Shown: positions 40,975 through 53,733 of the stretch, in pieces | How the letters are laid out: each line of letters starts with the position of its first letter | Numbering within the stretch: the stretch's first letter is position 1 | Origin: Vitrella brassicaformis CCMP3155 | Taxonomy: Eukaryota > Protista > Chromerida | Assembly (NCBI GenBank): GCA_001179505.1 | Contig: CDMY01000271.1 | Location: 1-64,000, forward strand | DNA: 64,000 bases | Direction of reading: 5' to 3' | The notes under the pieces: model-generated | The model's database searches: none | Seen by the model: the letters and a program-made list of their open reading frames with translations, nothing else | Told to the model about the DNA's origin: nothing | Program-made: the position numbers and the translations under genes

Positions 40975-43900
40975 CACACACACACAGACGTCCCAACATC
41001 ACAACGGCCACGCGTGGCATCCATCCGTCTCTGCTGTGGTACCTACCATGAACATGACGAATCCAGCGATGGTGAGGTTCTGTATGAGTGAGGGGACGAT
41101 CTGCAGGTCGCCCTCAAAGAATATCATCAACACGTTGAAAGGAATCGCTGTCAGCGGCTCCTCGCTGTCCTCCGCCTGCTTCGCGCAGTAATCACTGCAC
41201 ACTCACACACACACACACACACAGACACACACAGATGTCTTCTGTGAGCAGATCGGTTGTCTCGCTTCTGACCGAATGGTTTGCATCCACTTGGCCCGTA
41301 TCTCCGAGTTGGGGAGGAATTCGGTCATGACGAACATGCGAAACGAGACGAGCTCCTCCCCCTCCCACACAAACTCATGCTCGAAGATCTTGTACAGGCT
41401 GTCCTTCGCCTCCAGCACGCGCTTCAGGTTACGATTGAACTCCTGAACCCACACACGCCCGAACATTGTGGTGGCTGGACAGGCTGTGTCTCGTGTTTGT
41501 CTCACGGTTTTGTTGTTTTGGTTCTTGAGTGAGGGTCCGATGTCGGGATCGTCGAGGATGCGCTTCAGCGGATTCAACACGAGTATCGTCCGCTCCTCAC
41601 CTGCACCCATACATATCACACACACAGACATCCCACACCTGTTCGTTCCACCCACCCCCCCGTGAGTCTTACTATAGAGTCGATTGTGGAGCCGGTCGAG
41701 TGACCGCTGCGTCTCAGGTCTGGACCAGTCCTCGCGGGATTCAAAGAAGACCTCCGTGGGCGCCAGCTCGTAGGTGGTGAAGAACTCCTCGAGGTCCTGG
41801 TCGAAGGGCTTGAGGTAGGAGTCGTCGGGCGACAGCAGGCTCAGCTCCAGGCCCCTCTCGAGCTTGGTCACGCCGTAGATGGCGATGCACACGAGCGTCA
41901 GGAAGAAGAGCAGGATCGTCACCTTGGCCACCGGGTGAGTGATGAACTGTCCGTAGTAGTACAGGAAGAACAAACGCCACTTGCGACCCACGTTGCCTGA
42001 GGTAGACAGACAAAAGGCAGGCACCGCCCACAACACAACACAACCACGTGTCGCGCAACGCAATGCCACCCCCTCCCATGCCCCTCTGTCTGTGTGTACC
42101 CTTGGGTTCCTCGAAGAGTTCTGCGTCCATTCCGGGCGGTATGTGATCCATCGAGTCCTCCCGTGCGCCCTTGTGCGGTCCCTCCTCGGGTATCTCACTG
42201 AGTGGTGGGTTGCGTGAGCCGGCTGAACCGCTGCTCTTGGTGCTCTTGGGCGTCACGGTCATCATGGTGGCGGTGCTCTTGGGTGTGCCTGCGTTGGCCA
42301 TCTGCTGCTGGGAGCGGCTGGAGCTGGAGCGGCCATTGGTGGTGCTGCCAGGCATGGGATTGTTGGCTGTGGGTGGACGCTTGCGGCCGCCAGGAACGGT
42401 CGACACGGGCGGATTGGACGGCCGGGCGGGATGCTCCTCCTTGTGAGTGTACCTGCCATCGCATCGACGGAGGAGAGAGAAGGTTGGGCCTTTTGGTGAT
42501 TGTCGGTGTGGGTACCTATCCTACCTGAGCTGCTTCCTCTTTGCGAGTGCTTTGGCCTTAAAAGACACGAGTGAGAATGTCGACAGGTCGGGGTCGAGAG
42601 GGGGTTGGTAGCCTGGAGCCGACTCACGCGCCTCGACGCGCTCATCGACCTGAATGGATCGATGTGCGGCACAGACACGTGAAGGTGTGCAGAAGCAGCG
42701 CGTGTGCGCTGCATCCTTACCGGTGTCTTTTTCGGCAGGAAGAAGGGGCAGACTTGCAGGGCCTCTTCTCGCTTGGCGTCGAGACACAGCACGGCCAGGA
42801 AGATCGTCAACGCACACACATACCCGCAAAGCAACCCTGATGGATGTCATGTGCACACAAGGAGAGGAGAGGAGAGGGATGGATGGCGATCCAGCCGGCC
42901 AACTTTCTGCCAACCGAAGAATGAGTAGAGGCAGAAGTTGCGAATGGAGAGGTAGGGGCTGAAGGATCCGATAAACAGCGCCAGCAGATTCGTCACCGTC
43001 GTGATGGTGATGGATATCCCTATATGCACACAAGACACGGCACGGTGCAAACAGACCCTCTGTCTCCAGCCAGCCTCCCCTCCCTGCCTGTCCCACCCAC
43101 CGCAGTCGCGCATTGCGACGGCCATTCTTTCGTGTGCCCTTTCGACCATGTAGGCCAGGGCGTAGCTATTGATGATGACGAAGACGTCGTCCGCACCGAT
43201 ACCCATGATGAGGAAGATCGACACGAGCGCCGTCGGCACGAACTCCACACCCATGTGGGAGCACAGCCCCATCCCACCCAACACGGCCAGCAGGGCCGAG
43301 CAACAACCTGCAAACGCGGGCATCGCCCTGACAAACCAGACAGGCGAGGGGCCAGTTGCAAGGCGTTCATTGGTGCGGTGTCTCGACACAGGTGTTTGTG
43401 TGTGGGGATGACTTTGATTTGAAGAGGTCGCATGAGAAGTTTTGCCAGGTTGCGTATATGATGAGGACGAAAAAGGTGATGACGACAAAGATGATGTCCG
43501 ACGCACTCCGCGTCGCACGCGCCAGCTCGTCGTCTGCACACACGCACACACAAAGCCACACACTGCCTTTCTCTCTTCTAGAGGCTCTTCTGCGGTGTCC
43601 CGTCCCACCTCTGCTCCGGAAAGCCATGAAAGAGACCTCCAGCCCCGGGAAGTCCTTGCCGGGCTTCTCGAGGTTGGTGTAGTCGGACATGACTTCGATG
43701 AAGGCCTGCTCCCACTGATTGGTGCGCTCCAGGGCCGTGTCCGTGCCGATCTCGAGATCGTAGCTGAACATCAGGGCTGATGGACGGGACGGACGGACAC
43801 ACAGCCCCAGACAAGACACATTGCATGCAATGGGAGCCGATTCTCTGTCCGGTGATGTATGTGATAAGGCATGGTGTTGATTGACGCACCCACCTTGTGC

Positions 43901-46345: not shown

Positions 46346-46976
46346 AACAACCGGCGGAATGGGGACAGGGAGGGGGGAGGGGCGGGTGTTCGGGTGTATC
46401 GACCGAGTCCACATACGGTTCGCACTGTTGGATGTGGGCGGCATGTGGGTACTGTTGTGCCATGTGCAATTTGTCATAGTATGCTTCGTGTTGACGGAGC
46501 ACGGGACTGATGGTGCAGTGCAGTATGCGCCTGTGGGGTAGCAGCAGGGGCGGGTCGGTTCGGCTCGGCTCGGGTGTATGATGGACAGTACGTATCTGAA
46601 CTCACAATATGACCCGCAGGATGAAGTCGGCTAAGTGCCATTTTTGGGCTTTGCAGCACTGCCAAGATCTCTGCCTGCACATACGTCGCAACCGACGACC
46701 ACTATTCACATCGACACACACACACACACACACATACATACGTATGTATGGTCACACAAAACAGCTGCCTGCCTGCCTGCCTGATGTCCAGACAGAGGCA
46801 AACATGGAACCACATCTGACCATGCTGCTTCGCAGCGCACTCCGACAACCACCAGGAGAGAGTGATGCTGTGCGGGTGAAAAACCCAACTCACGTTTGTG
46901 AGGGCCGCACAGCCACTCCATATCTCCCCCCTCTCCCCCCACCACCCCCCCAGAGATCCCTTGCTCAGCCTGCGAA

Positions 46977-49900
46977 CTAGTCTTCCGAGACGTGCAATGC
47001 ATCAGCCAGTGAGAAGCGATGGCCGCACTCGGTGCAAAGGAGCCAGGAGGTCTCTTCCATCTCTGTGGAGATCCACCCGCCCCTGAGGCCAGCCGTGTTG
47101 ATGAGGCACTTCCTCGACGAGCAGTTCGGGCACTTGTAGTTGGTCGTGTTCCCCTCGTGCATCCTCGACGTCGCCCACCTGCACAAATCAGAACGCATTG
47201 CAAACAATCATGAAGACACGCATCCATCCTTCCTGCGCGTTCCACGACTGACTTACTCTTCGAGTCGTTTCAGCTCCTTCTGGTTGGCTTCCTCTCTCTT
47301 CTGCTTGAGCTCGTCCCTTGCCATGTCCTTGGCGTCCATCTTGGCCAGCTGGCTGGGCGGCAACCGCCCCTCATGCAGCTCGATCGTCAGCTTCGGATTG
47401 TCCTTGAGGTTCGAGCACAGAGAGCGGCAGAAGCGCTTGTAGGCCTCCGTGACGCCACCATGCTCCGATAAGATTGCCGTCTCGACATTCTGAGCCAAGG
47501 CGTGGAGAGACGCTCTGAAGGCAGACACAAGCATCGCACCCAGTGCTCGTGTGTGTCGGTCACCTTTTTGTGCCTTTCTTTCGGCATGCTCACTTGTGTG
47601 CGTCGACCACGCCGTCCTCGCTGCCTGCCTTCGGTTTCAGCAGGTGCTTCTGCATGGTCTCTGCCACCTTGGCCACCACCTTCTGCCTCATGGCCAGCTC
47701 GGCTGCCGTCTGCTTGCCGATGGATGCCACGCCGCCGCTGGCAGCTGGGGCCGTGGCAGGCAGCGCATAGCTCTTGTCAGCAACAGCCTTCCACCTGGCC
47801 ACCAGGGCCTTGGCGAGACTCACCACCTGAAGGGAAACATTGACATGGCTGTGGTTGTCTGTTCTTCGTTGCTGTTGACGTACGTACCTCTTTGTCTGTG
47901 TGTCTCTTGGCTAGGTCGTTGACGGTCCTGCCTATGAGGCTCTCCTTGAGGAAGAATAGGGTGATGTCAAGAACGGAGAGACGGCGAAGGGCGTTGAGAA
48001 TGAGGCTGCTGTCGGTGCCTGACGAGTCTTCCAGCTGAGACCGCAGCTCCTTCAGACACCGCAATCGCACCTAAGAGAGAAAGAAACAAATCGATCATGG
48101 GACATCACGGCCTTTCTCTTGTTGACAGTTTCGCTCACGTCGACGGTCTGTGTGGCCCCTAGCCGCTCAACCATGTCGCCGAGCGACAGGCTCTGGCCGC
48201 TGAGCCACCTCTGCATGCCCTCAGACGCACCCTTGACGCCCCGAACGCCCTTGGCCTCCTTGTCTGAAACACAGCAGCATAATAAATGCAGTGGTTAGGC
48301 AACTCTCCGCGGACTCCCGTCTGTCTCACCTGCGTCGAGAGGCACCAGTGGAGTGCCTCTCCGCTGCATTTTCGAAGGGACCTTGATCTCGCCACTGTGC
48401 GTCTTTTTCAGCCCCTTCACCCTCACAGACAAGGCGTGTTTCGCCAGCAGGCGATCAGATGTTGCCAAGCCCTCCTCCTCGTCACTGGGCTCGTCTGACT
48501 CGCCGTCGATGGAGGGAATCTTGGGCAACCGACCGGACGATGAGGAGCCACTTCCTGACCGACTCGATCGGGGAATGGACGAGAGGGCGTTTCTCAGCAT
48601 GAGGGCGTATCGATAGGGCAGCTCCGTCTTCTGCTGCCTCAGCTCTTCACATGTGCTGAGGTAGGTCTGGAGGTCGCTCTCGAGGGCCTGCTGTGCGTCA
48701 CCGTCGAGATGCCGCGCGTGAGCGGCCGCCTCGCCGGCCTTGAGCTGCCTGAGTGTAGGTAGGGTGAGGAAGGAAGAATAGGCAGACAAAACGCAAAGAA
48801 TGAGATGCTGCATTCAATTCAGCAGGCTCGTGTTGTGCATTCCTGACCCCAGGTTGGGTAGGGCTTCGAAGAGGCGTGAGATGACGCATTCCAGGCGAAG
48901 GTCCAGCTTGCCCTCAGCCCACAGCCGATCCGCACGCCACGTCGTCTCATCCCAAAACTGCACGACGTCACACAGCAACGGAGAGGCATCATGGAGGACA
49001 CGTGGCGGAGTGAGGTGGTGCGTACTTACCTCTTGGAACGCCTCTCGTATCCCCTCCGCAGTGTTGACGAAGTCGACCACCTCTGTAGGTTTGGGGGTCA
49101 GTTTTGGGTGCAGACGATTGAGGCGCGACAGCACCTGCACCGCTCGTGCGCCGTTGAGCGGTTTGTCCACGTACATGACGCACAGACGCGGTTCGTTATA
49201 ACCTGATGCAGAAAGGGAGAGAGAGCGGGACAATGCGCATGAGAATCACCGATTCCCTCTCGTGCGTCCGCGGATCCGATCCAGGTACGTGCCTGTCTCG
49301 AGTTTGTTGCATACGACAAGCAGGTCGGCCCTGTGGAGTGCCAAGCCTCCGTTGATGGACGCTTCGGTCCACCTCTTGCACACCAGCCTCGCACTGCCAT
49401 CCTCAGCCGCTGATGGGGTCGTGAGGTTCACCTCCCCCGAGAATGCCCCATAGACCGTCAAGTTGCTCACCACCAGTGTCGACGCATCCTCTGCCATGGC
49501 CTCACGGGCATCTGAACAGGACAGGCAGAAAGTGACAAGTGGCGTTCTTGCCGATCGCCATCTGCATCGCCTTGCCTTGCCTTACCCTGTATCCTTTGTT
49601 GCAGTACGCGAGTGACGAGGGCCACGTGCTCTCGCGATCGGCAGACAACCATGCCCTTGATCATAGGCTCAGCTCTCGGAGCCAAGCTGCCCCACGATGA
49701 AGTGTCCACTGAGCTGGCTGTGGGCTCATCTGTCACCGAATGGCGCTCGCGAAACCGCACGAAATGCCTGACGAACAGAAAGAATGACCCGATTGAGAGC
49801 GTGTGGCGGTGCAGGTGCTCTCACTTGAGTACGAAGTCGGCTTTGTAGACACACACGTCGTGGTGCTTGACGGCCGCCTTCATGACATCACTCCATGGGG

Positions 49901-51435
49901 TGCTGGCTGGCGACGGGGCAGGCGCCTTGTCCTCTGGTGTCTTCTTCTCCACATCGATGACAGGTCTGGCTGTGGTGTACTCCTTGAGCACATTGACGAT
50001 CACCCCATCGTGCACCGCCTGCACACAGGTACGCAGGCATCACCACACGTCAGAGGTGGTTTCTGTAATGTCTGTTTTGCGCTGACCCGTGCCATGGAGT
50101 AGCTGTGAACGGGCCCATAGGTCGTCTGGCTGGTCGACCTGCTGATCACGCCAAAGAGCTTGAGAGCGTCAGGCGATGGTGTGGCTGTGAAGCCAAAATA
50201 CGTCACGCCCAGGGGCTGGTGCTCCCTGCCGCCCAAGAGCTCATGCAGCTTCACACTGGTTGCCTTGCCGTGGGACCTAATGACGGAACACAAGGCCAGC
50301 CAGACACGTCATATAGGGTGTGAACATTTCATCACCTTTTTGTCACCTGTGTGCTTCGTCGGCGATGAGGGCGACCCGGCCTCGGCTGAGCAGCCGCTTG
50401 AGGCCACTGCGGGGCATGTTCTTGATGCACGGAAACTTCTGCAGTGTCGAGAACACAACCAACTGCTTGGTCTTCGCACCGGGACCATCTGCCGAGGGTT
50501 GGTCGGGGCCGTCAGTGAGCTCCGCTGCGACGTCCGAGTGGGTGGGCGAGGCGGCTGGCGACGGTGTGACGGCGGCGTCACACGCAGACGATAGAACAAG
50601 TGGCGACGGGTCGACCTCCATCGACGAAGGCGCGGCAGCTGCAACATTCGACGAGTCATCCTTTGCGTTGGCGGCCTCCTCTGTCTTCCTGGCCTTTGCC
50701 TTGCTCCAGAAGCTCTCCAGCGAGGGCTGCATCAGCTTGGCCGCTTTCCTCTTGCCGCCCACTTGAGGCTGCTGGGGGCTCGTCGATGATCCTACAGAGG
50801 CGGGTGGTTCCACTGACGGAGCGGGGCTGCACGTTGGTGCGGTGTTGGTGGATGAGAGCAGCTGCTGGAGCTCCTCGGACGTCCTTGCCCTCCTGATCTG
50901 GCGGCTGGGGAGGCCATTGCTGGTGAGGTACCGATGGACAACACGATATAGCTGGTCGTCCAGCTGCAACCTGCAAAACACAAAGACGTGAAAGCGTCCC
51001 CACCCTGAATGAACGCCCACGGCTGGTCTGTCTGTCTGCATGGAACGCACCTGTCATTGAGGATGAGTATGAGTGCGAAGTGCTGCCCGGCATCATCCCG
51101 CAGGTGGATCAGGGCGTGCACCAGTGCCGCTATGGTGAGGCTCTTGCCGCTGCCGGTGCAGTGCTGGAGGAGGTAGTTGGTGGGCGCTGTCAGACAAGCA
51201 TCATGTCGAACCAGGCCACAAACCTGCTGGACTGCTTCCACCTGAAACAAACAGAACGTCAAGCAATGCAAGTGCAAAGCGATGGCTGCCTGTGGTGCGC
51301 TACCTGATGTGCATTTGGTTTCAGCCCAGCTCCCTTCGGGAAGGCCTCAGACAAGTCCACAGGCTCTGAGTCATCTGGCTGTTTTTGAACTGATTTCTGT
51401 TCTTTTCGCTTCAGACCCTCCTCGAGGCTCGTCAT
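46977..51435 (-). CDS. Fusion protein: type I restriction enzyme R-subunit (HsdR)-like SF2 ATPase/translocase + TFIIS-like N-terminal, central and zinc-ribbon domains (15 exons, ~1,150 aa)
   Basis: HsdR motifs PNAHQ, YLLQHCTGSGKS, NDRLQLDDQL, FSTLQKF, IADEAHRSHG, YFGFTATP, HSYSMARAVHDGVIVNVL, KGMVVCRSR, GAFSGEV, LLVVCNKLETGYNEPRLCVMYVDKPL, AVQVLSRLNR, VVDFVN. These splice in phase to TFIIS-like ESLIGRTVNDL...AKALVARWK, YKRFCRSLCSNLKDNPKL...LAKMDAKDMA and CPNC...CTECGHRF. Confidence 0.8.
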
Positions 51436-51606
51436 CAGCGCCGGAAGATTCGTGAAGACACTTGTTCAAACTGGTGGTAGTGGTTAAGGGTAAGATTGTC
51501 CGTCCAAACCACTTGCGAGCTTGAAATGTCGGCGAGCTTCCAAAGTGAGCAGGAATAGGATTTGATCTGAGGAAGTAGGCAGAGTGGAGCTTTCAGAATG
51601 TCGCCA
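51436..51606. promoter_or_regulatory. Putative bidirectional promoter between the HsdR-TFIIS fusion and the Ubl-CCCH-RING gene
   Basis: Divergent ATGs at 51435 (-) and 51607 (+) are 171 bp apart. The in-frame stop just upstream of 51435 limits N-terminal extension within that exon. Confidence 0.45.
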
Positions 51607-53733
51607 ATGGAAGCGGTGCGTGTGTGCATTCGTCTGGAGGGCCACGATGAGCAAGTCCTGGCTGGCCCTGTGCCTGTAGAGATAGATCCTTTGTGGACTG
51701 TCAACGAGACCAAACGAAGACTCATGGCGGTGCTGCCCATGTCGGCTTCACAGCATCCTGACCCAAAGTAAGCACAAGCCGAAGGCCGTGGGTGGAATGC
51801 TCTGCAGCTAGTGTGCGCCGTGTGGCTCCTGGTCCTCTGCTTTGTCGCAGGATGTATCAAATCTACCGCCGAGATGCTCACGATGAGGCACTCGTCCACG
51901 GCCCGATAAAGGACATGAGGAGCTTCAGATATGCTTCATCAGACGATACGGTCATTTTGAGACGCAAAACCGCCGGCACCCATGCAAGCAGGCAGTGCTG
52001 CGTTCGTGGTTCCCTGTCCCTCTCATTCGCATTGCTGTGTTGGGGATGCAGGGCACTCCCACTCCCACTACCGTCACGGTTGCCGAAGATGAGCCTTCAG
52101 TGGAAGATAACCAAGCCAATGAAGATGAGGACCAGCCCTCAGACGCCGTCAACGCCACGGCCTTATACGATGCAGCCACACGCCACGAGAATATACTCTA
52201 CAAGCTCAAGCCCTGCGACCATTTCGAGCAGGTACGTACGGCAAGGCAACACGCCAAGAACGAAGCCATCAATTCCTCGTGTGCGCATTCATTCGGTGCA
52301 CTTGCAGGGGTATTGCCCAGGGGGTGACACGTGTACCTTCGCCCACGGACCCGCGGAGCAGCGGTGCTACCGCTGGCTCGTCAAGGTGAACGGACATCTG
52401 ACGCACGCAACAACTGGGGCATTCCATTCTGTTGGTACGGCTGAACTCCCGCCATTGTTGGCTGTTGTTTTGACGTTTCAGGGCACGTGTGTGGAGGGCG
52501 GGAGGTGCTCGCTGATACACGCCCGCCCTCCCATGTTCATGCCGCTCATCGGCCCCCGCCTGCGGCCATGCAGCTTCATCTACCCAGACGGTAGGCACAA
52601 GAGAAGCGTAGCGAAGGAATGCTGGTTGGGTGGCACGGTGCAGACTGGCTTGGTGTGTTTGCCTTGCAGGCTCGGGATGTAAATACGGCGTCACGTGTTG
52701 GTTCACGCACTCGAGGGACGAGGAGAGACTGGCTGAGCGGTAAGCAATGCATCACACAGCCCGTCTGCACTCGTCCATGCGCCTCTCTCCATGTGTGCGT
52801 GTGGATGTCAACTGTCAAACAAACAGTGCACTAGGGTCCAACAGTGCGGCCCCACCGGACGGACAGGAAAGGTTAGGTCGGGAATGACGGGCGAGGGTGC
52901 CTGAATCACGAGCCGTGTGCCTCGGTGTCGGTGCGTGTTGTGCAGGCTGGCGACATTTGCCCCTCCGACCTTCGGCGATGACGACGTGGCCCCTCCTCCT
53001 CCCCTATCTCCGATGTTCGAGTATGAGGAGTCGGATGCGATCAATGATGGCACTGCTGCTCTCGTCCTGCCTCCCCGGCCCAGCTACCCCGCACCTACTC
53101 GTGACAGCAACGGAGTTAGCGGAACGGCGTCGGGACCTGAGGGGTGAGCGAGACGGAGGGAAGGGAAGGGGAGAGGAGAGAGTGAGTGAGTGATGTGTAT
53201 GAAATGCATTCGTTGCAGAGATGTGGTGGATGAGGCCTCGAGAGTGAGCAAGCTCGAGAGGGAGGTGGCCGCACTGTCGGCGGAGCTGGCGAGGGAGCGA
53301 CAGGCAAAGGAAGACGAAAAGGACAAACGGTGAGATAAGATAAGTGGCTGGCTGTCGAAGACAGACAGCACAGTCTCAGCTTGATTGACACATGAATTAT
53401 GCGCTGATCGATGGATGCCTTGCTCGCTCTTCTCTGTCTGTCTGTCTGTCTGTCTGTCAGGATGTGCAAGATTTGCCACGAGCGGCTGCTGTCGGTGCTC
53501 CTTCTGCCTTGCAAGCATCTCGTTATGTGCACACGTAGGCGAGGCGCAATCAATGTGATTGATGTGCACACAAACAAGAGCGTACACGCACGCCCACCCG
53601 ATGCTCTTCTTTTTGGGTCGTCTCTTCCTTCTCTCTGGGGATAGGTTGCTGTGTGGAAGACTTCAAGGGCACATTATGCATCCTGTGTCGGCAGGAGTTC
53701 ACGGATAAGATCATGATCCAGCCGTTCGACTGA
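51607..53733 (+). CDS. Multi-CCCH zinc-finger, coiled-coil and C-terminal RING-HC protein with a possible N-terminal ubiquitin-like domain
   Basis: CCCH fingers KLKPCDHFEQGYCPGGDTCTFAH, a second ending GTCVEGGRCSLIH, and RPCSFIYPDGSGCKYGVTCWFTH. Coiled coil VSKLEREVAALSAELARERQ. RING MCKICHERLLSVLLLPCKHLVMC...C...LCILCRQ, ending QPFD* at 53733. Confidence 0.8.

What the first reader, a model, noticed from the sequence alone, without database searches (positions are those of the whole stretch)
46977..51435. Bacterial type I restriction-enzyme motor (HsdR) fused in frame to a TFIIS-like RNA polymerase II-binding module in a eukaryote
Seen: all SF2 motifs of HsdR appear in order and intact (QHCTGSGKS, DEAHRSHG, GFTATP, YSMARAVHDG, KGMVVCRSR, AFSGEV, NKLETGYNEP, QVLSRLNR, DFVN). 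HsdR-like C-terminal sequence continues to ~48370 (ESDLQTYL...LKKTHSGEI). I traced every junction (exons 51435-51304, 51241-51051, 50970-50347, 50276-~50087, ..., 49202-49030, 48957-48848, 48748-48330, 48263-48139, 48070-47888, 47826-47594, 47514-~47257, ~47179-46977). All phases are compatible, with no intergenic gap, giving one ~1,150-aa ORF that ends in TFIIS N-terminal, central and Zn-ribbon domains. Known: HsdR is an ATP-driven dsDNA translocase of prokaryotic R-M systems, and TFIIS domains bind Pol II. Inference: a domesticated restriction motor tethered to Pol II, a possible Mfd/CSB-like factor that pushes, rescues or removes stalled polymerase. I know of no described protein with this architecture.
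Basis: partly seen in the sequence, partly recalled or inferred. Interest (0 to 1): 0.92.

Follow-up and report, generated by a model that had tools for sequence, protein, structure and literature searches.

The report
HsdR-type DNA motor fused to TFIIS
This is a real, expressed eukaryotic gene that joins a bacterial-restriction-type DNA motor (without its nuclease) to a cleavage-dead copy of the RNA polymerase II factor TFIIS, and it belongs to an uncharacterised family also found in green algae.

Summary
A 15-exon minus-strand model (51435-46977) gives one 1144-aa ORF. Assembled RNA contigs from two independent studies carry all 14 splice junctions in one contig, including the junctions that link the helicase to the TFIIS part.

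The N-terminal 640 aa form an SF2 motor with intact ATPase motifs. Its closest relatives outside eukaryotes are bacterial type I restriction R subunits (HsdR). It lacks the HsdR nuclease domain.

The C-terminus carries TFIIS domain I, domain II and a four-cysteine zinc ribbon. The ribbon's catalytic acidic hairpin (RSADE) is replaced.

The architecture is not unique. It recurs in Chlamydomonas incerta, Pleodorina, Edaphochlamys, Cymbomonas and many marine picoeukaryote contigs. All TFIIS-linked helicases form one well-supported clade, inside a eukaryote-type clade separated from bacterial HsdR. It is therefore an old, conserved fusion, not a recent domestication in this organism.

I found no paper describing it. 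The function is inferred only: an ATP-driven duplex-DNA translocase docked on Pol II.

Earlier notes of this scan cover only sub-features of this same gene. None reports the fusion on other DNA.

The parts
46977..51435 (-). Complete CDS: 15 exons, 1144 aa, ATG at 51435, TAG at 46979-46977
   Evidence: Translation has no stop. One spliced RNA contig spans it in X7 and in X8.
51304..51435 (-). Exon 1 (aa 1-44). Short N-terminus running straight into the Q motif; no nuclease domain.
   Evidence: the ORF listing starts the ORF at this ATG, the first start codon after an upstream in-frame stop. RNA contigs end about 26-45 nt upstream. It matches the family N-terminal consensus F..G..G..PR.HQ.
51051..51241 (-). 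Exon 2. Motif I (Walker A, GSGKS at 51154-51140) and motif Ia.
   Evidence: ResIII and PF18766 hits. Junctions seen in RNA.
50347..50970 (-). Exon 3. Rest of RecA1 up to DEAH (50360-50349). Holds a 112-aa low-complexity insert (50846-50508) with the PIP-like QPSLESFW (50729-50706).
   Evidence: No relative has the insert.
50087..50276 (-). Exon 4. End of motif II and motif III (TATP at 50188-50177).
49825..50018 (-). Inter-lobe region.
49586..49767 (-). Motif IV (49658-49632).
49293..49511 (-). AFSG block and start of motif V. Its donor is GC, so intron 49292-49203 is GC-AG.
   Evidence: RNA joint 49201/49292 has 4 nt of slack, which fits CT..GC on the + strand.
49030..49202 (-). Exon 8. End of motif V, motif VI (QVLSRLNR at 49137-49114) and DFVN.
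   Evidence: T1R_D3-like hit. This stretch is about 50% identical to bacterial HsdR.
48848..48957 (-). Exon 9. Start of the post-motor helical region.
48330..48748 (-). Exon 10. Helical region and acidic/Ser-rich linker, with family-conserved motifs DL..Y...CE......ELPY (48675-48604) and T.SGEI (48402-48385).
   Evidence: These columns are conserved across the fusion family. The 48330/48263 junction is seen in RNA.
48139..48263 (-). Exon 11. Linker.
   Evidence: Junctions on both sides are in X7 and X8, and the 3' one also in X1 and X2.
47888..48070 (-). Exon 12. TFIIS domain I (TFIIS N-terminal / Med26 helical bundle), first part.
   Evidence: PF08711 at 2.5e-5, 24.4 bits against a cut-off of 20.6.
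47594..47826 (-). Exon 13. End of domain I, linker, start of domain II.
47257..47514 (-). Exon 14. TFIIS domain II (central domain).
   Evidence: PF07500 at 1.2e-21. PDB matches: TCEA1 at 2.6e-8 and the Bye1 TFIIS-like domain at 6.6e-7.
46977..47178 (-). Exon 15. Four-cysteine zinc ribbon (CPNC at 47132-47121, CTEC at 47036-47025). The hairpin GLRGGWISTEMEETSW (47090-47043) stands in place of the RSADE loop.
   Evidence: PF01096 at 22.6 bits. It aligns to the RPA12 and TFIIS ribbons with a 4-residue longer loop. A variant loop is seen family-wide.
46645..46976 (-). 3' UTR, at least 330 nt, containing microsatellite tracts.
   Evidence: The X7 contig reaches 46645 and the X8 contig reaches the edge of the laid stretch.

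Best explanation
SHOWN. One expressed, spliced nuclear gene encodes a 1144-aa protein of a conserved but uncharacterised eukaryotic family. Its parts, in order:
- aa 28-640: an SF2 motor of the bacterial HsdR (type I restriction R subunit) kind. All ATPase and translocase motifs are intact, and the HsdR PD-(D/E)xK nuclease domain is absent.
- aa 641-860: a helical region and linker with family-specific conserved motifs.
- aa 880-1140: a TFIIS-like module with domain I (the TFIIS N-terminal / Med26 helical bundle), domain II and a domain III zinc ribbon. The ribbon's catalytic acidic hairpin is replaced.

INFERRED mechanism.
- Domain II docks the protein on the Pol II Rpb1 jaw/funnel, as it does in TFIIS and Bye1.
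- Domain I links it to other elongation factors.
- The ribbon may enter the pore but cannot stimulate transcript cleavage.
- The motor hydrolyses ATP and tracks along duplex DNA beside the polymerase without unwinding it. HsdR does this while anchored to its methyltransferase.
- The likely outcome is reeling template DNA towards or away from a paused or arrested Pol II, to restart it, clear obstacles or dislodge it.

HISTORY, also inferred. A single ancient fusion arose in a eukaryotic lineage of nuclease-less HsdR-like helicases, which came from a bacterial R-M gene.
For: Gene and transcript:
- Stop-free 15-exon model.
- All 14 junctions lie in single RNA contigs from two studies. Intron depth is zero there, while a DNA run covers the introns.

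Motor identity:
- The exon 8-9 query finds about 1000 relatives, and the full-length ones carry HSDR_N plus PF18766 plus T1R_D3.
- The window protein scores 256 bits against a bacterial-HsdR-only HMM and 515 bits against the eukaryote-clade HMM.
- Its motifs match the bacterial consensus almost letter for letter.
- The eukaryote-only profile hits EcoR124I HsdR at 5e-31, against RadD at 2e-6.
- The AF2 model of relative P0320 has EcoR124I HsdR as its top 15 Foldseek hits.

TFIIS module.

Conservation of the fusion:
- Same domain order in P0014, P0182, P0183, P0297, P0320, P0410 (Cymbomonas), P0179-P0181 (Volvocales) and P0003/P0028/P0150.
- In Tara contigs the helicase ORF is directly followed by a Med26+TFIIS_M ORF. 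In L001 a 52-nt GT..AG intron joins the two frames.

Phylogeny and linker:
- All 13 TFIIS-linked rows fall in one 17-row clade (UFBoot 99 / SH-aLRT 97), inside a eukaryote-type clade split from bacterial HsdR at 100/100.
- The linker carries invariant family columns.

Known biology used:
- EcoR124I HsdR is a dsDNA translocase (PMC2291450 abstract, listed).
- The TFIIS middle domain is a common Pol II-interacting domain (PMC12139180 abstract).
Against: - No experiment or co-complex prediction here shows Pol II binding, ATPase activity or DNA translocation.
- The ribbon is divergent: its Pfam score is barely above the cut-off, and the loop is 4 residues longer and not conserved across the family. 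Pore insertion is therefore uncertain.
- Logan contigs are assemblies, not single molecules. An extra internal start site or poly(A) site inside exon 10 or 11 cannot be excluded.
- The spliced window protein could not be given whole to Pfam, PDB or AlphaFold. The whole-protein statements rest on local HMMs and on relatives.
- The structural model is of a relative and of moderate quality (pLDDT 67, pTM 0.45).
- The tree is unrooted, so the direction of transfer is inferred from distribution only.
Confidence: 0.6

Rival explanations
1. The TFIIS-like module does not target elongating Pol II. It serves as a general protein-interaction scaffold. Domain I could bind the disordered interaction motifs of other factors, or domains II and III could bind Pol I, Pol III or another partner. 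The motor would then work in chromatin remodelling, repair or replication. In this species that work could be PCNA-linked through the PIP-like insert.
For: - The ribbon hairpin is not conserved and lacks the D-E pair.
- The best PDB match of the ribbon among polymerase factors is Pol I subunit RPA12, at a non-significant E of 0.023.
- The window protein carries QPSLESFW flanked by basic clusters.
- Unfused or differently fused relatives (Surp or SAM domains) show that the motor is used in other contexts.
Against: - Domain II is the best-conserved part of the module (1.2e-21). It keeps the YK..RS..SNLKD and MA.DELK blocks shared with TCEA1.
- The full I-II-III domain order of TFIIS is kept in every lineage.
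- The PIP-like motif is found only in the window protein.
Confidence: 0.2
2. The protein keeps a genome-defence role from its restriction ancestry. It would act on foreign or repetitive DNA (viruses, transposons) that is being transcribed, rather than on ordinary genes.
For: - It has HsdR ancestry.
- Its distribution among eukaryotes is patchy, which is typical of conflict genes.
Against: - It has no nuclease domain, and no methyltransferase or specificity partner lies nearby.
- It shows steady expression in ordinary culture RNA runs.
- No relative was found in the viral contig collection.
Confidence: 0.1
3. These are two adjacent genes, a helicase and a TFIIS paralogue, wrongly joined by the model and by transcript assembly.
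For: - Assembled contigs can chain overlapping transcripts.
- One earlier lay of reads showed a loose-end contig at 48232, inside exon 11.
Against: - There is no intergenic gap. Every gap is a 57-99 nt intron that is spliced in RNA, and the frame stays open across all junctions.
- The loose-end sequence is not in the window and did not reappear in the narrower lay.
- The same linkage is conserved in at least 13 divergent relatives, including intron-poor picoeukaryotes where it is one ORF.
Confidence: 0.03
4. It is bacterial contamination, or a very recent horizontal transfer of an hsdR gene into this genome.
For: The nearest non-eukaryotic relatives are bacterial HsdR, about 30% identical overall and about 50% in motifs V-VI.
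Against: - It has fourteen spliceosomal introns, spliced mRNA and eukaryotic neighbours (Patched/sterol-sensing-domain and CCCH genes).
- It sits deep inside a eukaryote-type clade at 100/100.
Confidence: 0.01

Closest known systems
Uncharacterised database proteins with the same architecture: Chlamydomonas incerta KAG2423130.1 (UniRef100 id A0A835VPP4, 'TFIIS N-terminal domain-containing protein'), Pleodorina starrii GLC56404.1, Edaphochlamys debaryana KAG2501461.1, Cymbomonas tetramitiformis KAK3262227.1, plus Tara Oceans picoeukaryote contigs
   Same: - Same domain order: PF18766/ResIII, then T1R_D3-like, then conserved linker motifs, then Med26, TFIIS_M and a CxxC...CxxC ribbon without RSADE.
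- Same helicase clade.
   Different: - Only about 28-46% identical to the window protein.
- The Volvocales versions are 1744-1933 aa with large inserts.
- None has the window protein's 112-aa insert with the PIP-like motif.
- No function has been published for any of them, as far as I could find.
Bacterial type I restriction R subunit, HsdR (EcoR124I, PDB 2W00; TIGR00348)
   Same: - Same SF2 motor, with motifs Q, I, Ia, II, III, IV, V and VI and the following DFVN block near-identical to the bacterial consensus.
- T1R_D3-like domain and part of the following helical domain.
   Different: - No N-terminal PD-(D/E)xK nuclease (HSDR_N).
- Relatives score below the TIGR00348 cut-off.
- No HsdM or HsdS partner nearby.
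- It is an intron-bearing eukaryotic gene with a C-terminal TFIIS module in place of the methyltransferase-contacting end.
TFIIS (Dst1 / TCEA1; TIGR01385)
   Same: Three domains in the canonical order. Domain II is clearly homologous. The ribbon has four cysteines.
   Different: - The invariant acidic hairpin (RSADE) is absent and the loop is 4 residues longer.
- The module is preceded by 860 aa of motor and linker.
[quoted passage not shown] A similar effect here is only a possibility.
Bye1 / PHF3 / DIDO / SPOCD1 (proteins carrying a TFIIS-like domain)
   Same: They follow the same logic. A TFIIS middle domain is used as a Pol II docking module and joined to an unrelated effector domain (PMC12139180). 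Exon 14 matches the Bye1 TFIIS-like domain at 6.6e-7.
   Different: - Their effectors are PHD and SPOC reader domains, whereas here the effector is an ATPase motor.
- No PHD or SPOC hit was found here.
- The 2025 review of this superfamily contains none of the words helicase, ATPase or restriction.
Mfd (bacteria) and CSB/Rad26 (eukaryotes): functional analogues only
   Same: They are SF2 duplex-DNA translocases that bind an RNA polymerase and push or dislodge it. This comparison rests on established knowledge.
   Different: - They belong to different SF2 families (RecG-like and Snf2). Neither appears among the best solved-structure matches.
- They bind the polymerase by other modules and from upstream DNA.
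- There is no evidence here for the same activity.
Unfused eukaryotic HsdR-like helicases: Entamoeba histolytica EHI_046680, Thecamoeba, and Tieghemostelium DLAC_05281 (with a Surp domain)
   Same: Same nuclease-less motor. They are the sister group of the fusion clade within the eukaryote-type clade.
   Different: They have no TFIIS module.

Membership tests
HsdR (type I restriction R subunit) | SF2 motor of HsdR type (Pfam PF18766/PF04851 plus PF22679 T1R_D3-like; motifs Q to VI) | tested here: met
   - Exon-level Pfam hits.
- 256 bits against a bacterial-HsdR-only HMM.
- Motif-by-motif agreement with the bacterial consensus.
- The clade profile hits EcoR124I HsdR at 5e-31.
- Fold of a relative matches HsdR.
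HsdR (type I restriction R subunit) | N-terminal PD-(D/E)xK endonuclease domain (PF04313 HSDR_N) | tested here: not met
   - Only about 27 aa precede the conserved N-terminal block.
- The ORF listing starts the ORF at this ATG, the first start codon after an upstream in-frame stop.
- RNA contigs end just upstream of the ATG.
- No family member has PF04313.
HsdR (type I restriction R subunit) | Whole-protein score above the curated cut-off of TIGR00348 (284.55 bits) | tested here: not met
   Relatives P0151, P0014, P0178 and P0183 score 82-107 bits, matching only model positions from about 273 to 670. The spliced window protein could not be submitted itself.
HsdR (type I restriction R subunit) | Works with HsdM/HsdS, which are encoded next to it | tested here: not met
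   The neighbours are a Patched/sterol-sensing-domain gene and a CCCH zinc-finger gene. The rest of the genome was not searched.
HsdR (type I restriction R subunit) | C-terminal helical domain | tested here: inconclusive
   BLAST similarity to bacterial HsdR runs to about aa 730. Beyond that, only family-specific motifs are conserved.
TFIIS (TFSII) | Domain I (TFIIS N-terminal / Med26 helical bundle, PF08711) | tested here: met
   24.4 bits against a cut-off of 20.6, on exon 12 alone.
TFIIS (TFSII) | Domain II (PF07500) | tested here: met
   77.7 bits, 1.2e-21. PDB matches to TCEA1 and Dst1.
TFIIS (TFSII) | Domain III four-cysteine zinc ribbon (PF01096) | tested here: met
   22.6 bits against a cut-off of 21. 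It aligns to the RPA12 and TFIIS ribbons. The cysteines are invariant in the family.
TFIIS (TFSII) | Acidic hairpin (RSADE, the D-E pair) that stimulates transcript cleavage | tested here: not met
   The loop reads LRGGWISTEMEE, which is 4 residues longer. No conserved acidic pair is seen across the family.
Bye1/PHF3-type TFIIS-like-domain proteins | TFIIS middle domain combined with SPOC (and PHD) | tested here: not met
   The middle domain is present, but no exon gives a SPOC or PHD hit.
Mfd / CSB (polymerase-displacing translocases) | RecG-like (Mfd) or Snf2-family (CSB) motor | tested here: not met
   HsdR is the top solved relative by sequence profile and by fold. Neither Mfd nor CSB/Rad26 is among the listed matches; Snf2-type chains (Chd1, Rad54) appear only weakly, from rank 33 on.
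HsdR-like helicase-TFIIS fusion family (uncharacterised; e.g. UniRef100 id A0A835VPP4) | Nuclease-less HsdR-type motor, then conserved linker motifs, then TFIIS domains I and II and a variant ribbon, with the helicase inside the fusion clade | tested here: met
   Domain order. Linker motifs. Clade support 99/97.

The most novel reading that the evidence does not exclude
This family is a eukaryotic counterpart of Mfd built from different parts. The cleavage-dead TFIIS ribbon occupies the pore of an arrested or backtracked Pol II and blocks rescue by transcript cleavage. The HsdR-type motor, held at the jaw beside the DNA, then uses ATP to push the polymerase on or strip it off the template. In the window's species the PIP-like insert would couple this to PCNA, to clear Pol II ahead of replication forks.
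Probability: 0.2. Interest if true: 0.85.

Novelty: new variant of a known kind. Interest (0 to 1): 0.62.

Why it matters
Proteins that carry a TFIIS-like domain are currently seen as Pol II-docking modules joined to reader domains (PHD, SPOC). Here the partner is an ATP-driven DNA motor of restriction-enzyme ancestry, and it is conserved across distant algae and protists. If it acts on Pol II, it would be a new way of handling stalled or obstructed transcription. It would also be a clear case of a bacterial defence motor re-used in the eukaryotic nucleus. The family has members in the Chlamydomonas group, where genetic tools exist, so the question may be open to experiment. Whether C. reinhardtii itself has an orthologue was not checked.

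Tried and rejected
- The spliced protein has no reference, so it could not be sent whole to Pfam, PDB, AlphaFold or the big protein searches. I used exon pieces, local HMMs and relatives instead.
- phmmer of single exons against PDB gave nothing for the helicase. Full-length relative P0151 alone against PDB also gave nothing. Only profiles worked.
- The window's own protein was not found in the protein libraries. The best identity over exon 8-9 was 54-73%, in fragments.
- The third homology search, with the TFIIS-part ORF of L001, returned only 2 hits and no names.
- The viral contig scan found no relative.
- Loose-end contigs at 48232 and 51026 looked like a possible alternative 5' end for a TFIIS-only isoform. 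Their sequences are not in the window, and the 48232 one did not recur in the narrower lay. I rejected them as evidence for a separate transcript, but they remain unexplained.
- Literature: no paper held both HsdR and TFIIS in a relevant sense. The 'HsdR' hits in the Entamoeba Dicer paper are 'HsDrosha'. The Aravind 2012 review discusses SWI2/SNF2 origins from R-M systems but not this fusion.
- I did not determine the organism.

Full report
**1. Gene model and observation**

Reading the minus strand from 51435 to 46977, I rebuilt the exon chain. The exons are:
- 51435-51304
- 51241-51051
- 50970-50347
- 50276-50087
- 50018-49825
- 49767-49586
- 49511-49293
- 49202-49030
- 48957-48848
- 48748-48330
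- 48263-48139
- 48070-47888
- 47826-47594
- 47514-47257
- 47178-46977

Joined, they give 3435 nt and a 1144-aa ORF without a stop. Thirteen introns are GT-AG and 57-99 nt long. Intron 7 (49292-49203) needs a GC donor. It left three exons unspecified, and the ORF is 1144 aa rather than about 1150.

**2. One transcript or two?**

Public runs that hold this DNA were found and laid on the locus.
- Runs X7 and X8 come from different samples and studies. Each has a single assembled contig (3793 and 4066 nt) running from the 3' UTR (at or below 46645) to just upstream of the ATG.
- Both contigs have all 14 introns removed at exactly the predicted positions. That includes the GC-AG intron and the three junctions that connect the helicase half to the TFIIS half (48848/48748, 48330/48263, 48139/48070).
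- Intron depth is zero in X7 and X8, while DNA run X5 covers the introns. X7 and X8 therefore behave as RNA.
- X1 and X2 independently show the 3' junctions.
- There is no intergenic space. Every gap between coding blocks is a spliced intron and the frame stays open.
- Assembled contigs are not single molecules, so an additional internal start or poly(A) site cannot be excluded. Nothing points to one.
- Loose-end contigs at 48232 and 51026 in the first lay are not from this window. The 48232 one did not recur.

**3. Domains**

Pfam on single exons gave the following:
- TFIIS_M: 1.2e-21 on exon 14.
- Med26/TFIIS-N: 2.5e-5 on exon 12, above the cut-off.
- Zn_ribbon_TFIIS: 22.6 bits on exon 15, just above the cut-off.
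- ResIII, PF18766 'SWI2_SNF2' and T1R_D3-like: weak but consistent hits on the helicase exons.

Exon 14 matches solved TCEA1, Dst1 and the Bye1 TFIIS-like domain.

The ribbon aligns to the RPA12 and TFIIS ribbons. In place of the ...RSADE... hairpin it has LRGGWISTEMEE, which is four residues longer.

Nothing precedes the helicase except about 27 residues, which match the family's N-terminal consensus. The HsdR nuclease domain is absent.

**4. Relatives**

Intron 8 is in frame and stop-free, so window:48848-49200:- served as a legal 117-aa query for the exhaustive representative search. It found 1031 proteins.
- Full-length bacterial hits are genuine HsdR, with HSDR_N plus PF18766 plus T1R_D3. 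Examples are Corynebacterium and Acidimicrobiia entries.
- Several of the best hits (P0003, P0014, P0028, P0150) carry Med26 and/or TFIIS_M behind the helicase, and P0150 also has the ribbon.
- Searches with P0014 and P0178 added more. These are Chlamydomonas incerta KAG2423130.1, Pleodorina starrii GLC56404.1, Edaphochlamys debaryana KAG2501461.1, Cymbomonas tetramitiformis KAK3262227.1, the EukProt protein P0297, and the environmental proteins P0182, P0183 and P0320 (73 cluster members).
- All of these have the order PF18766/ResIII, T1R_D3, Med26, TFIIS_M.
- In Tara Oceans contigs a prokaryote-style gene caller split the gene. The 650-724-aa 'type I restriction enzyme R subunit' ORFs P0151, P0007 and P0185 are each directly followed by, or overlap, a Med26+TFIIS_M ORF. 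In L001 a 52-nt GT...AG intron joins the two frames exactly.
- The ESM Atlas has a 53-member, all-eukaryote cluster with this domain set.
- The viral contig collection has none.
- The window's own protein is not in these libraries. Its nearest relatives are only 28-46% identical.

**5. Is the motor HsdR-type?**

- A local HMM built from bacterial HsdR cores alone scores the window protein at 256 bits. The eukaryote-clade HMM scores it at 515 bits.
- Column by column, the window protein agrees with the bacterial consensus at the Q motif, I, Ia, TLQKFP, DEAH.S, FTATP, PFH.YSM, IV, AFSG, V, MYVDK, VI and DFVN.
- A profile made only from the eukaryote-type clade finds EcoR124I HsdR at 5e-31 in the PDB. 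The runner-up is RadD at 2e-6.
- An AlphaFold2 model of relative P0320 (pLDDT 67) has EcoR124I HsdR chains as its first 15 Foldseek hits.
- NCBIfam TIGR00348 (hsdR) matches relatives at 1e-23 to 1e-31. These scores are below the curated cut-off, because only the motor half of the model is covered.

This is homology to HsdR. It is not membership of the functional restriction-subunit family.

**6. Phylogeny**

I built a careful IQ-TREE tree of 56 motor cores on 479 columns. Three long-branch rows (P0209, P0034, P0193) were left out. A quick tree with all 59 rows is.
- A 22-row eukaryote-type clade separates from 34 bacterial HsdR rows at 100/100.
- Within it, a 17-row clade (99/97) holds all 13 rows known to be TFIIS-linked. 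It also holds four rows whose contigs are too short, or were not examined, to tell.
- Its sister group holds unfused or differently fused proteins. These are Entamoeba EHI_046680, Thecamoeba, and Tieghemostelium DLAC_05281 with a Surp domain.
- The window protein groups with the Tara picoeukaryote pair P0151/P0007, inside an 11-row clade (97/89) that also holds Cymbomonas and the Volvocales.
- The alignment of full-length fusions shows invariant columns in the linker too: Y, C, L-P and G in DL..Y...CE......ELPY and T.SG.I. The corresponding window positions are 48675-48604 and 48402-48385. Selection on the linker is what one expects of a single polypeptide.

The simplest reading is one ancient fusion inside an already eukaryotic, nuclease-less HsdR-like lineage. 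The tree is unrooted, so bacterial-to-eukaryote direction is inferred from distribution.

**7. The ribbon**

Across the family the CxxC...CxxC cysteines are invariant, but the hairpin between them varies and nowhere keeps RSADE. The cleavage-stimulating function of TFIIS is therefore not a conserved property of this family. [quoted passage not shown] What a naturally cleavage-dead ribbon does here is unknown.

**8. Mechanism (inferred)**

The known parts:
- HsdR is a duplex-DNA translocase that tracks along intact dsDNA while anchored to another protein (PMC2291450 abstract).
- The TFIIS middle domain is a common Pol II-interacting domain re-used by Bye1 and its relatives (PMC12139180).

Putting these together, the most likely function is an ATP-driven DNA translocase anchored to Pol II through the TFIIS-like module. 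It would act on paused, obstructed or arrested polymerase. I give this about 0.6.

The main rival, at about 0.2, is that the module is a scaffold for other partners and the motor works in chromatin, repair or replication. A retained defence role gets about 0.1. A mis-joined gene pair or contamination is effectively excluded.

**9. Novelty**

I found no paper that describes an HsdR-TFIIS protein. The 2025 review of domain acquisition in the TFIIS superfamily contains none of the words helicase, ATPase or restriction. The architecture is nevertheless already in public protein databases under automatic names such as 'TFIIS N-terminal domain-containing protein'. The window gene is therefore a new and divergent member of an existing but unstudied family. 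As a kind, it is a new variant of the TFIIS-like-domain proteins, with a motor as the effector.

**10. Surroundings**

- Upstream, a divergently transcribed + strand gene with a CCCH zinc finger starts about 80-100 nt from the 5' end of this transcript.
- Downstream on the minus strand lies a Patched/sterol-sensing-domain gene.
- No methyltransferase-like or specificity-subunit-like gene is adjacent.

Noticed in passing
window 50846-50508 (motif at 50729-50706), minus strand: A 112-aa Ala/Ser/Pro-rich insert sits inside RecA lobe 1. It carries QPSLESFW, which fits the PCNA-interacting PIP-box pattern Q..[ILMV]..[FYW][FYW], and is flanked by the basic clusters KRKAAK and KAKARK. No relative examined has the insert or the motif, so conservation cannot back it up.
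   Followed up: partly
window 49292-49203, minus strand: Intron 7 is a GC-AG intron. RNA contigs in two runs confirm the junction.
   Followed up: yes
window 51560-52700, plus strand: A divergently transcribed neighbour. Its RNA contig starts at about 51560 with a GT..AG intron at 51768-51850, and the ORF 51792-52682 has a CCCH zinc-finger hit. The two transcripts start within about 100 nt of each other, which suggests a bidirectional promoter.
   Followed up: partly
window 42847-43608, minus strand: An ORF with Patched / sterol-sensing-domain hits (6e-19). It is probably an exon of an NPC1/Patched-like gene downstream of the finding.
   Followed up: no
window 46700-46790 and 46926-46951: Microsatellite tracts, (GT)n and (CAGG)n-like, and a G-rich run in the 3' UTR. 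Read laying skipped them as repeats.
   Followed up: no
window 48232 and 51026: RNA-run contigs fit the locus up to these points and then continue for 255 nt with sequence not found in the window. Their origin is unexplained. They could come from a paralogue or be an assembly chimera.
   Followed up: partly
L001 6330-6390 (Tara/JGI picoeukaryote contig); also L006 and L007: Database entries named 'type I restriction enzyme R subunit' (P0151, P0007, P0185) are really the first half of a eukaryotic helicase-TFIIS gene. A prokaryotic gene caller split it at a small intron of 52 nt in L001.
   Followed up: yes
P0362 (Tieghemostelium lacteum KYQ93880.1) and P0393: The same nuclease-less HsdR-like motor occurs with other partners. 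P0362 (Tieghemostelium lacteum, a dictyostelid) has a Surp (splicing-associated) domain, and the environmental protein P0393 has SAM domains.
   Followed up: no
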